Of a DNA stretch of 64,000 nucleotides, positions 21,537 through 64,000 are shown in pieces; position 1 is the stretch's first letter, and each line of letters begins with the position of its first letter. This stretch comes from Phallusia mammillata (lineage: Eukaryota): contig OZ281498.1 of assembly GCA_965637545.1 (NCBI GenBank), positions 3,844,001 to 3,908,000 on the forward strand, in the 5' to 3' direction. Both the position numbers and the translations under genes were made by a program. A model generated the notes under the pieces. That model had not been told where the DNA came from. It was given only the letters and a program-made list of their open reading frames with translations, and did no database searches.

Positions 21537-24500
21537 TCATTCACCAATGTTGTTAATTATTTTCGCAATTTGGCGGCCTCTTTTTCCAAATACGATATTA
21601 TGGTGATGAGCATCCAACCTCACAATCTTCACGCGGCCGTCACATATTTCGCCTACGTCATAATCCTTCGACTGCGCTCTTGATTGCATCACCAACGTGA
21701 CGTCACAGGTGAGACGTGACGCCGGGACGTAGTCGATTGCAACTTTTAAACCCTTAGCAAAACGGAGCAACGACTTGGTGAGGTTGATTCTAAAAGCGAA
21801 AAACTTTAACTGTGTGTCCTATAAGGTGGAGTTAAGCTGGACAAACTTAATTTCACCTTGAGCAATCTGGAGAGATTTTCCTGGCCATTCGGACCATTTC
21901 ATCAATTCGATCATTGGTGTTTAAGCATCTGGACAAAACATTAAAAATGTCTCGGAAATCCCGATTTAACAGAAGTTCCCTGACGTATGTTGCCATTACG
22001 TTGAGCTCCATGTGTCCGGAATGCTTCAAGTGGGCCTGAAAATGCCAGATGGATGCTGTCGTGATAAAACGTTTTACTTTTAAAAACGTTACAAATATTT
22101 CTTACTTTAATTCTCTGTGGTATGAATGTGTGGGAAGAATCGATGAGGACAAGATTGATCTTTTCAGCTTCTGTTTGGATCTGTAATGCCGTTTCGATTG
22201 CCAAGACAGCGCCGAAAGAAAATCCTACCAAGTTCACAATACGGCGGTTTCCAATTTCTTTGGCACATTTGTTTGCCCTCTCCACAATCGACCCGCTTGT
22301 GTCACCATCTGTAGCTTGAAACCCATACGCTGGTGCAGCCAGGAGCGATGTTATGTCTTCGTAAAGATAAGTACTTCGGCCCAGCGCTGCAAAAAAGAAC
22401 CAAGGCGACAGATTTTCTTTTGTGTCGTTTAACTTGACACAAAAACTATTCTCCGGGCGCGGTTGAAGCAAATCACAAACTCGTTTGAGTATCTGACTCT
22501 TGGATACACCGTAGTCTTCATAATTATCCTTGGCATATACGTCGACAACATTGAATTTTTTCATGGCAATTATGCGTTTCATGTCCTGTAGGCTCATTTG
22601 AGGCACGTCATCGACAGAAACAGCAACGTCATACTCTTGCATGATTTTTTGACTTAGCTCGATGCACATCAGCGAGTCCATGCCGTATTTGGACATTGGC
22701 GATGTTTCGACTATCTCAGATGCCGTCTGGAACATAAAGATTGTGGTACAGTAAATTCGATTACTTTTACGATGAACAAGTTGTCAGACATTACTTTTGT
22801 ATGTTGTTACCTTTAATCCGAGTATATTTGCAATAATCTCTGAGACGGATTCTTTTCTTGACTTTTCTTCGGGCTTTGTGTTCGGAGCTAGAATTAAGCT
22901 TGAAACAACAGTTGCTGTATCGTCCCTATTGGCTAGAAAAATGTCCAAGTCCTGCCATCAATAAAAAATAAAATTAAAAAAACAAGATTATTACTACATA
23001 ATAAGTTCAATCAATGAGAATAGTGCAAAAAATAAACCTTTATGTCAATGTCTTGAAGCTTTTTGGCCACAACAGCAATACATCTAGGTGAAATTTTAAA
23101 CTCTTATTCCTACTTAGCAATGAAACCCCATTATTTCCTCTATTTTACTTCAACTCTAGTGAAATGCACTAAGAACTGCAACTCTATTACAAACCTACGC
23201 GTACGTATGAGACTGACAATGCTTAACCATACATGACTTTACCGTGGGAAAACCAAACTTACTTTTACATCAGCCATAAACGTCACATAAAATTCGAAAC
23301 ACTTACATTAAGACATAACCGCACGGGACATGGAACCACACCGGCAATTGTCCCTTAAATGTTAGCGGCCATCCCAACTTCACCAACCGGTCCCCACTGA
23401 ATTGCGAGTCCCGGCAATCCGTCTCTTTCTCTCGCTTCACAAACTCGCTCCATGCAAGAGTTTGCGAGTCCGTAGTTTGTTTGCCCGATGTTTCCCCGTG
23501 CGCTCACAACTGACGAAAATGCGACGAACCACCGAAGTTTCTTGCAAATTTTACGAGATACTCTATAAATGCAACATTTGCTGAAACAAGCGCCAGATAT
23601 AGCAGGTTATTTTCGAATAAATATATGCGCTAAAACTTACCTGTCCAGGCAGTCTATTCCCAGACACTTGGGACTATAAACCGTTTCAAAATGTTCCTTG
23701 GATTGGTTTACGAACAAGCCATCTCTCAAGGGCGCAGCGAGGTGAAATATCCCACCAATGGAATCATTCAAAATCTCGCGGACGGCAATCGTGTCTGTTA
23801 TGTCAGCACTTGAGACGTCGACCTTTATGCCTTTCTCTTTCCAGTCGTTCAAGAAGCTCTCCTGGTAAGCACTACTAACGCCTGTCAGAAATGCTAGATT
23901 TATATCAAGCAATTGTCTCAGAAACAAGATAAACGACTAAAATGTTGGTAATGGTCGCTTCTCAAATTAGAATCTGTTGTGCAAACCTCGTCGACTTGAA
24001 ACAATTAAAAGGTGACGAGCCCCACGACCAACCAACCAATCACAGACTTCCAAACCAAAACCACCAAGTCCTCCGGTGATGACATAAGTCAGATTCGGGT
24101 CACAAACAGTTCTTTACAAAAACAATTAGTTTATACATCTAAACACAGGAGTGGAATGAATTTCCGAATACCTTGACTTTAAATTTGTATCAACCTTGCT
24201 TCCAACGTGAACAACTATCTTTCCAATGTGTTGGCCCTTTGACATGTATCTGAATGCTGATTCCATATCGTTCCTTAACGAGACATATTTTGTAGGTCTT
24301 ATTTTAGTTTGAATATAATTGAATTACCTTGCAAACGATTTAACTTGCAACGGCTTAACCACACCAAATCGTATCCCGTCGCTCACGTGACTTCGCACGT
24401 CTTCCCAAATTTCTTTGTTACAAGAAAATAGAGAATCAAGCAAGATGCCGTGGAAAGTTATGTTGCGCAAGAAATGAGACATTTCTAAAAATGATTAGCA

Positions 24501-63800: not shown

Positions 63801-64000
63801 TTTTTCAGAATCAACCTCACCAAGTCGTTGCTCCGTTTTGCTAAGGGTTTAAAAGTTGCCACTAACTACGTCCCGGCGTCACGTCTCACTTGTGACGTCA
63901 CGGTGGTGATGCAGTCGAGAGCGCAGTCGAAGGATTATGACGTAGGCGAAATATGTGATGGCCGCGTGAAGATTGTGAGGTTGGATGCTCATCACCATAA
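51848..64000 (+). CDS. FASN: FAS-like megasynthase copy B (KS-AT-DH-psiMT-ER-KR-ACP-TE); open frame, last ~20 codons beyond the window
   Basis: Exons 51848-51974, 52322-52474, 52624-52797, 52982-53189, 53395-53528, 53598-53695, 53758-53968, 54056-54262, 54334-54504, 55453-55640, 55762-55951, 56017-56246, 56326-56514, 56582-56864, 56933-57121, 57323-57562, 58023-58197, 58301-58608, 58676-58858 (GC donor), 58908-59081, 59170-59324, 59384-59545, 59612-59724, 59789-59927, 60033-60210, 60281-60431, 60500-60798, 60851-60973, 61087-61243, 61297-61398, 61459-61583, 61691-61931, 62009-62264, 62625-62765, 62851-63471, 63548-63735, 63809->64000. All catalytic motifs present. Confidence 0.92.
54546..55408. 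mobile_element. hAT MITE (863 bp) in FAS-B intron 9
   Basis: CAGGGGTCACCAA termini; exact TSD ATCTAAAT. Copy A has the single empty site at 30303-30310. Confidence 0.9.

What the first reader, a model, noticed from the sequence alone, without database searches (positions are those of the whole stretch)
21537..64000. A >42-kb nested palindrome built from head-to-head FAS-like megasynthase genes
The order is FAS-A(-), psi1(-), core with MADF gene, psi2(+), FAS-B(+). All 37 exons are collinear and equal in length except for one 9-nt indel. Non-coding blocks are mirrored too (37040-37150 vs 49934-50053; 33230-33425 vs 51540-51790). The duplicated unit was therefore [older FAS relic + FAS], implying at least two rounds of duplication. 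Local FAS expansion is the known route to animal FAS-like polyketide or specialised lipid synthases (sacoglossan molluscs, insects). A palindromic, conversion-prone FAS locus in a chordate-type genome is not something I recognise as described.
Basis: partly seen in the sequence, partly recalled or inferred. Interest (0 to 1): 0.75.

Follow-up and report, generated by a model that had tools for sequence, protein, structure and literature searches.

The report
Inverted pair of sea-squirt FAS genes
Two copies of an ordinary animal fatty acid synthase gene lie head to head in a sea-squirt genome and are kept partly alike by copying sequence between them; the structure is real, but it is a lineage-specific gene duplication and not a new kind of enzyme.

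Summary
Window 21598-64000 is a nested inverted repeat. Two complete, collinear 37-exon animal-type FAS genes, A (minus strand) and B (plus strand), face each other across an 18-kb interval. That interval holds mirrored relics of FAS exons 1 and 3, mirrored non-coding blocks, and a unique 6.5-kb centre with a MADF gene.

The gene bodies are 95% identical in exons and 89% in introns. Identity is a mosaic: single introns range from 67% to 100%, and one 342-nt identical run spans a whole intron. Exon 1, the upstream DNA and the relics are only 70-82% identical. This fits one old inverted duplication of a [relic + FAS] unit, followed by patchy gene conversion between the arms.

An allelic mis-join is unlikely. 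Contigs from three independent studies differ from arm A by at most 2% and cross the arm/core border. Arm-specific and core pieces have equal depth.

Both proteins keep every FAS catalytic motif and group with the Ciona savignyi FAS. Their ER exon matches solved FAS better than the solved FAS-like polyketide synthases (AFPKs). The polyketide suggestion is therefore unsupported.

It is a new member of a known kind and of modest interest.

The parts
21537..33116 (-). FAS-A. Complete animal-type fatty acid synthase gene with 37 exons (ATG at 33116, stop at 21537-21539), interrupted by one premature TAA.
   Evidence: Pfam KS/ER/KR/ACP/TE. Spliced alignment to bird FAS residues 1-2501. Catalytic motifs intact.
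23355..23357 (-). Premature TAA in exon 33 of FAS-A. FAS-B has CAA at 62214-62216. The stop aligns near bird FAS residue 2077, close to the end of KR and before ACP and TE.
51848..64000 (+). FAS-B. Same 37-exon structure with no internal stop. Its last exon is cut by the window end, so about 16 codons and the stop are missing.
21598..32826 (.). High-identity zone of arm A. It pairs with 52232-64000. The inner border lies in intron 1.
52232..64000 (.). High-identity zone of arm B. The outer end is not seen because the window ends.
32827..33427 (.). Exon 1 and upstream DNA of FAS-A. It mirrors 52155-51535 at only 71-75% identity (exon 1 itself 90.6%).
37572..37643 (-). psi1 relic of FAS exon 3.
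   Evidence: tblastn. Alignment A1.
39761..39842 (-). psi1 relic of FAS exon 1. It has a frameshift and a 23-nt deletion, and the ATG is lost.
46375..46488 (+). psi2 relic of FAS exon 1. It has small deletions, and the ATG is lost.
48471..48554 (+). psi2 relic of FAS exon 3.
37012..37167 (.). Mirrored non-coding block. Its partner is 49917-50078, at 75-82% identity.
39290..39506 (.). Mirrored non-coding block. Its partner is 47242-47466, at 77% identity.
39844..46374 (.). Unique central spacer of the palindrome. No mirrored blocks were found in it.
40912..41393 (+). MADF-domain gene with at least two exons. The N-terminal half of the domain follows the ATG at 40912. The C-terminal half lies at 41178-41393.
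   Evidence: Pfam PF10545. Frame translations.
33515..36500 (.). High-copy repeats (33515-34519 and 35324-36500) inserted on the A side only. They account for the length difference between the two inner arms.
   Evidence: Word depth is hundreds to thousands of times the single-copy level in three DNA runs.
54546..55446 (.). 901-bp insertion in intron 9 of FAS-B (intron 948 nt in B, 70 nt in A).

Best explanation
This is a genuine, old inverted segmental duplication in a sea-squirt genome.

First, a partial or decayed upstream copy of the FAS gene arose beside the functional gene. It now survives as relics of exons 1 and 3. Then the unit [relic + FAS] was duplicated in inverted orientation around a roughly 6.5-kb spacer that today holds a MADF gene.

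Since then the non-genic parts and exon 1 have drifted to 70-82% identity. The two gene bodies, from intron 1 to at least the 3' end, have exchanged many short tracts by arm-to-arm gene conversion. That left a mosaic of 67-100% identity, with mean neutral divergence about 0.12.

Both genes encode a canonical, fully reducing animal fatty acid synthase, and both have been under purifying selection. Copy A has very recently acquired, or segregates, a nonsense codon near the end of KR.

Shown: the structure, the gene models, the motifs, the mosaic pattern and the phylogenetic position. Inferred: the order of events, conversion as the homogenising process, and the recency of the stop.
For: - **Palindrome and nested blocks:**
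- **37 shared GT-AG exons:**
- **Divergence:** exon identity is 94.9% and aligned intron identity 88.8% (using an earlier choice of boundaries for exons 19-21). Ks is 0.12, Ka 0.036 and Ka/Ks 0.30. Ks per 150-codon window ranges from 0.02 to 0.25.
- **Mosaic pattern:** per-intron identity is 67-100%, with introns 2, 6 and 12 identical. The longest identical run is 342 nt and spans intron 12, against a shuffle mean of 96 and a maximum of 157.
- **Border of high identity:** it falls to 71-75% within intron 1 and continues inward as collinear mirrored blocks.
- **Relics:** they share derived states with each other against A and B.
- **Not alleles:** contigs from three independent DNA studies differ from arm A by 0-2%, far less than A differs from B. 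They run 32997-33709 across the arm/core border. A-specific pieces have the same depth as unique core pieces (X1 221-250 vs 280; X3 21-23 vs 15-29; X4 8-9 vs 8-10). A/B-identical pieces are about twice as deep in X1 and X3.
- **Flank:** arm A is flanked on the left by ordinary unique genes with EF-hand, MRP-L47 and UBX domains.
- **Canonical FAS:** motifs; tree with A+B at 100 and A+B with the Ciona savignyi FAS at 99; ER exon closer to FAS than to AFPKs.
- **Equal rates:** 28 A-derived against 29 B-derived residues.
Against: - No read or contig was seen to span the whole 18-kb interval or the B-side border.
- Logan contigs give only coarse depth, and unitigs of a heterozygous animal may be allele-specific.
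- The outer end of the palindrome lies outside the window.
- The one RNA-like run examined (X7) laid nothing on FAS exons 1-9 of either copy, so expression is not shown.
- The splice sites of exons 19-21 are uncertain.
- The ((psi1,psi2),(A,B)) grouping rests on a handful of sites in about 200 nt.
Confidence: 0.77

Rival explanations
1. Assembly artefact. The two high-identity arms are the two haplotypes of a single FAS locus in a very heterozygous animal, joined head to head by the assembler.
For: Tunicates are highly heterozygous (general knowledge). The arms differ by about 8% and by several indels. No spanning long read was examined. A 2:1 depth ratio of shared to A-specific pieces is, taken alone, also expected for alleles.
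Against: - The inverted homology does not stop at the arms. It continues inward in the same order at 70-82% identity for another 6-7 kb. That is far too diverged for alleles.
- Allelic differences seen in three independent samples are at most 2%.
- A-specific pieces have the same depth as unique core pieces in all three samples, not half.
- The same border contig, 32997-33709, occurs in X1 and X3, and two X4 contigs cover the same stretch, so all three studies span the border.
- The identity mosaic of 67-100% per intron is not what two haplotypes look like.
Confidence: 0.07
2. No gene conversion. The arms are simply a younger, second inverted duplication, or are kept alike by purifying selection alone, while the inner relic pair is an older, separate event.
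For: Mean arm divergence (about 0.12) is lower than that of the relic region (about 0.25-0.3). Two separate events of different age could give this. Exons are under purifying selection (Ka/Ks 0.30).
Against: - Selection on the protein does not explain introns that are 100% identical beside introns at 72-79%. Nor does it explain a 342-nt identical run that includes a whole intron.
- A single younger duplication would give uniform divergence, not Ks of 0.02-0.25 between neighbouring windows.
- The least similar introns match the divergence of the relic region, as expected if they are unconverted remnants of one old event.
- A younger duplication landing exactly on the older copy, with a border inside intron 1, amounts to conversion.
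Confidence: 0.08
3. Neofunctionalisation. One or both copies are on the way to a specialised FAS-like synthase (AFPK-like, or a dedicated lipid synthase).
For: Local FAS duplication preceded AFPKs and specialised FASs in molluscs and arthropods (PMC10764717, PMC10515154). The ACP-TE exon is very divergent from every protein in the big library, with a best hit of 33% identity. No expression of either copy was seen in the one RNA-like run, which could mean tissue-restricted use.
Against: - All KS, MAT, DH, ER, KR, ACP and TE catalytic motifs are intact and identical in both copies.
- The copies are 92.6% identical in protein, and Ka/Ks is 0.30. The numbers of A-derived and B-derived residues are equal.
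- They are sister to each other and group with the Ciona savignyi FAS.
- The ER exon is much closer to pig and human FAS than to EcPKS1 or EcPKS2.
- Tunicate transcriptomes were reported to hold only animal FAS (PMC10764717).
Confidence: 0.05

Closest known systems
Animal (metazoan) type I fatty acid synthase, FASN (solved: pig FAS 2vz8/2vz9, human FAS 8vf7)
   Same: Same domain order, KS-MAT-DH-(central non-catalytic region)-ER-KR-ACP-TE, collinear with bird FAS residues 1-2501. All catalytic motifs are present. The ER exon matches pig FAS at E = 1e-39. The genes group with the Ciona savignyi FAS.
   Different: Only about 40% identical to both the bird and the Ciona savignyi FAS. Present as an inverted pair, and one copy has a nonsense codon.
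Arm-to-arm gene-converting palindromes of mammalian sex chromosomes (human Y P1-P8, X palindromes; PMC8600007, PMC8981503)
   Same: Two inverted arms that carry genes, separated by a unique spacer, with sequence exchange between the arms that keeps them more alike than their age predicts.
   Different: Much smaller, with 11-kb converted arms against tens to hundreds of kb or more. Arm identity is about 92% and patchy, not above 99%. Conversion is confined to the gene body. The chromosome is unknown. The gene is a housekeeping enzyme, not a testis-expressed gene family.
Animal FAS-like polyketide synthases (AFPKs, e.g. EcPKS1/EcPKS2 of sacoglossans; PMC10515154, PMC10764717, PMC11831141)
   Same: They descend from the same megasynthase stock, and they arose in lineages where FAS-like genes multiplied locally.
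   Different: The window's genes keep an intact ER and all the other reducing domains. They score well below FAS level against EcPKS1 and EcPKS2. They belong to a group, the tunicates, in which no AFPKs were found.

Membership tests
Animal type I fatty acid synthase (FASN) | Single polypeptide with the domain order KS-MAT-DH-ER-KR-ACP-TE. | tested here: met
   Pfam hits on single exons. Collinear tblastn and spliced alignment to bird, Ciona, insect and crinoid FAS over residues 1 to about 2500.
Animal type I fatty acid synthase (FASN) | Catalytic residues of all seven activities are present: KS Cys-His-His, MAT GHSxG plus Arg, DH HxxxGxxxxP, the ER and KR NADPH motifs, KR Lys/Ser/Tyr/Asn, ACP DSL, and TE Ser-Asp-His. 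| tested here: met
   Multiple alignment with named FAS proteins. Both copies keep all motifs. For the TE His column, B shows the first His of the HH pair and then ends at the window edge.
Animal type I fatty acid synthase (FASN) | Phylogenetic placement inside the animal FAS clade with the species' relatives. | tested here: met
   FastTree: A+B with the Ciona savignyi FAS, SH-like support 99. Taxon sampling is small, branches are long, and no AFPK sequence was in the tree.
Animal type I fatty acid synthase (FASN) | Makes palmitate from acetyl- and malonyl-CoA. | not testable with these tools
   Needs an enzyme assay.
Animal type I fatty acid synthase (FASN) | An intact open reading frame. | tested here: inconclusive
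   B is open over all 2344 codons seen, but its end lies outside the window. A has one TAA at codon 1949 of my model. Whether that is fixed, an allele or an error was not tested.
Animal FAS-like PKS (AFPK) | Closer in sequence to AFPKs than to FAS, and usually with altered or inactive reducing domains. | tested here: not met
   The ER exon scores 138 bits against pig FAS, against 93 (EcPKS1) and 81 (EcPKS2). The ER, DH and KR motifs are intact.
Gene-converting palindrome | Two inverted arms around a unique spacer on one DNA molecule. | tested here: met
   The A-side border is backed by contigs from three studies. The B-side border and the full span were not tested with reads.
Gene-converting palindrome | Arm-to-arm exchange: a mosaic of tracts much more alike than the background divergence. 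| tested here: met
   Per-intron identity of 67-100%. A 342-nt identical run against a shuffle maximum of 157. Ks of 0.02-0.25 by window.
Gene-converting palindrome | Concerted evolution shown across species: arms more alike within a species than orthologous arms between species. | not tested
   No related tunicate locus could be fetched with the collections on hand.

The most novel reading that the evidence does not exclude
The palindrome acts as a self-repairing store for an essential single-function gene on an ordinary tunicate chromosome. Arm-to-arm conversion would repeatedly rescue or spread lesions, such as the present nonsense codon in copy A. The truncated product of copy A would run from KS to near the end of KR and lack ACP and TE. 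If expressed, it could pair with full-length FAS-B in the obligate dimer and change the enzyme's output.
Probability: 0.08. Interest if true: 0.5.

Novelty: new member of a known kind. Interest (0 to 1): 0.3.

Why it matters
The locus is a compact, fully sequenced example of an inverted gene pair in an invertebrate chordate. One old duplication, a sharp conversion border inside intron 1 and many short conversion tracts can all be read directly from the sequence. That makes it a handy natural case for measuring tract length and any bias of gene conversion outside mammalian sex chromosomes.

For lipid biology it adds only that a tunicate lineage carries two near-identical canonical FAS genes, one of them possibly just disabled. 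It offers no evidence for a new enzyme class in chordates.

Tried and rejected
- **Word-index search, ACP-TE exon:** it found nothing, because the length filter shuts out full-length FAS.
- **Word-index search, Ciona FAS residues 1-450:** the list was swamped by multi-module bacterial PKSs and gave no tunicate relatives. It was not useful.
- **Two crude exon-chaining scripts:** they produced spurious tiny or over-long exons and were dropped. I replaced them with my own spliced protein-to-genome aligner.
- **Depth-first search of central splice options:** it timed out.
- **First splice search for exons 19-21:** exon 20's donor was set two bases too far downstream and showed no GT. One search repeated the search with the donor free to vary.
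- **IQ-TREE run:** it did not finish, so FastTree was used.
- **Rfam and tandem-repeat scans:** they found nothing that bears on the locus.
- **Literature:** no paper was found on FAS duplication in tunicates or on Phallusia FAS.
- **RNA-like run X7:** it laid only on repeats and not on FAS exons. It gave no splice evidence.
- **Joined spliced proteins:** they were used only inside local scripts for alignment, Ka/Ks and the tree. All database searches were made exon by exon, by reference.
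Full report

Yes. An inverted-repeat scan and a self-BLAST show that window 21598-33427 matches 64000-51535 in reverse complement, in long blocks of 91-95% identity. The largest block is 5.8 kb, so introns are included. Arm B is cut by the window end, so the outer limit of the repeat is unknown.

A more sensitive comparison finds four further collinear mirrored blocks between the arms, at 73-82% identity:
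- 37012-37167 / 50078-49917
- 37572-37772 / 48542-48334
- 39290-39506 / 47466-47242
- 39691-39843 / 46567-46395

A weaker continuation of the arms themselves, 32825-33427 / 52155-51535, is 71% identical. The unique centre is about 39844-46374. The window has no N.

**2. What the arms encode**

Pfam on single open frames of the minus strand of arm A gives the KS N-terminus (32916-33209), an ER-type ADH_zinc_N domain, KR (23637-23927), and ACP plus thioesterase (21941-22735).

The ACP-TE exon found nothing in the word-index search. In the exhaustive representative search its best hit was only 33% identical, to the Ciona savignyi FAS. That search supplied full-length FAS references.

tblastn and a spliced protein-to-genome aligner that I wrote align both arms collinearly with bird FAS residues 1-2501. 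After resolving the poorly conserved central part, both copies fit one 37-exon GT-AG model. Exon lengths are identical apart from exon 36 (179 vs 188 nt). The splice sites of exons 19-21 remain uncertain. Several in-frame solutions shared by A and B exist, and one of them is also the one found with the Ciona reference.

- **FAS-A** runs 33116 to 21537 on the minus strand.
- **FAS-B** starts at 51848 on the plus strand and leaves the window about 16 codons before its end.
- **FAS-A stop:** FAS-A has one in-frame TAA at 23357-23355, where FAS-B has CAA. It aligns near bird FAS residue 2077, close to the end of KR and upstream of ACP and TE. This agrees with an earlier first-reader note on this window.

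The joined spliced proteins were used only in local scripts. They were not sent to search or folding tools.

**3. What kind of enzyme**

- Every catalytic motif is present and essentially identical in A and B: KS Cys-His-His, MAT GHSxG and Arg, DH HxxxGxxxxP, the ER and KR nucleotide motifs, the KR Lys/Ser/Tyr/Asn set, ACP DSL, and TE Ser/Asp/His.
- A quick ML tree puts A and B as sisters (support 100) and joins them to the Ciona savignyi FAS (99), on long tunicate branches. No AFPK sequence was in that tree.
- The ER exon scores 138 bits against pig FAS. It scores 93 and 81 bits against the solved AFPKs EcPKS1 and EcPKS2.
- Lin et al. 2024 screened 232 tunicate transcriptomes and found only animal FAS, with no AFPKs or PKSs (PMC10764717).

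These are therefore lineage-specific duplicates of the ordinary animal FAS. Nothing points to a polyketide-type or specialised synthase.

**4. History read from the sequence**

Between A and B, Ks is 0.12, Ka is 0.036 and Ka/Ks is 0.30. Aligned intron identity is 88.8%, which matches Ks. The average hides a mosaic:
- Ks per 150-codon window ranges from 0.02 to 0.25.
- Per-intron identity ranges from 67% to 100%. Introns 2, 6 and 12 are identical, while others are 72-79%.
- The longest identical run is 342 nt (29572-29231) and spans a whole intron. The shuffle mean is 96 and the maximum 157.

The least similar introns are as diverged as the mirrored intergenic blocks and relics (70-82%). High identity ends inside intron 1, at about 32826/52232. 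Exon 1 is only 90.6% identical, and its upstream DNA 71-75%.

The simplest reading is one old inverted duplication, with neutral distance about 0.25-0.3. Many short gene-conversion tracts confined to the gene bodies followed.

The relics consist of exon 1 and the start of exon 3 only. They have lost the ATG and carry deletions or a frameshift. psi1 and psi2 share states with each other that differ from both A and B, for example ATCCACAA against ATCATCAA in exon 3, and ATATGG against ACATGG in exon 1. The relic therefore already existed beside FAS when the unit was inverted-duplicated. This rests on few sites.

Counts of A-derived and B-derived residues against outgroups are equal (28 vs 29). 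Ka/Ks before and after the stop is similar (0.28 vs 0.36). The nonsense codon in A is therefore recent, polymorphic or an error.

**5. Is it an assembly artefact?**

I had one reads call and used it on 30500-36500, the A-side border. Only Logan contigs were available.

- Contigs from three DNA studies (X1, X3, X4) cover arm A with 0-2% differences. That is far below the A-B difference.
- One 713-nt contig, 32997-33709, crosses from FAS-A exon 1 into the core in X1 and X3. In X4 two contigs cover the same stretch.
- A-specific pieces have the same depth as unique core pieces in all three runs. Pieces identical in A and B are about twice as deep in X1 and X3.
- The inverted homology continues at 70-82% identity well inside the arms.
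- Arm A is anchored on its left in ordinary unique genes with EF-hand, MRP-L47 and UBX domains.

Together these make a head-to-head join of two haplotypes unlikely. I put it at about 7%. The B-side border, the full span on single molecules and the outer end were not tested.

Regions 33515-34519 and 35324-36500 are high-copy repeats present only on the A side. They explain the unequal lengths of the inner arms. The RNA-like run X7 laid only on these repeats and on no FAS exon. Exons 4-6 of the two copies are 97.6-98.5% identical, so transcripts of either copy should have been laid there. Expression of either copy is therefore not shown.

**6. Comparison with what is known**

The enzyme is a member of the animal FAS family (see the membership table). 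The genomic arrangement works like the gene-converting palindromes of mammalian X and Y chromosomes (PMC8600007, PMC8981503). It is much smaller, its arms are only about 92% identical, and conversion is patchy.

I found no paper on FAS duplication in tunicates or on this locus. Earlier follow-up notes of this scan name the genome as Phallusia mammillata. I did not verify the species. The same notes list an 18-kb quasi-palindrome elsewhere in this genome, so inverted duplications may be common here.

**7. Verdict**

The structural interpretation is supported and the functional hint is not. This is a new member of known kinds: an inverted segmental duplication with gene conversion, and a lineage-specific FAS duplicate. 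It is useful as a clean small model of conversion and is of modest general interest (0.3).

Noticed in passing
window 23355-23357 (minus strand): FAS-A has a single C-to-T nonsense change (TAA; FAS-B has CAA at 62214-62216). It aligns near the end of the KR domain, so the product would lack ACP and TE. Ka/Ks is similar before and after the stop, and the two copies have changed at equal rates, which suggests a very recent or segregating lesion.
   Followed up: partly
window 33515-34519 and 35324-36500: High-copy repeats, with word depth hundreds to thousands of times the single-copy level in three DNA runs. The RNA-like run X7 also has contigs on them. They are inserted only on the A side of the palindrome.
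   Followed up: partly
window 37992-38693: This stretch is its own reverse complement at 73% over about 740 nt. It is probably a foldback or TIR-type element, and it lies between the two psi1 relic exons.
   Followed up: no
window 19417-19665: A 250-nt stretch that is its own reverse complement at 86%. It is a hairpin-like element in the unique left flank.
   Followed up: no
window 54546-55446: A 901-bp insertion in intron 9 of FAS-B that is absent from FAS-A. Other large arm-specific intron length differences occur in intron 3 (408 vs 184 nt), intron 16 (259 vs 460 nt) and intron 17 (371 vs 103 nt).
   Followed up: no
window 12680-16331 (+): A 535-codon open frame without any Pfam domain is followed by an open frame with a UBX domain. 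They probably belong to one UBX-domain gene with a long unannotated exon. Further left lie an EF-hand open frame (974-1630, plus strand) and an MRP-L47 fragment (10823-11179, minus strand).
   Followed up: partly
window 21941-22735 (ACP-TE exon): This exon has no relative above 33% identity among the representatives of about 15 billion proteins. The whole protein is about 40% identical to the bird FAS and to the Ciona savignyi FAS alike, which shows how fast tunicate FAS evolves.
   Followed up: partly
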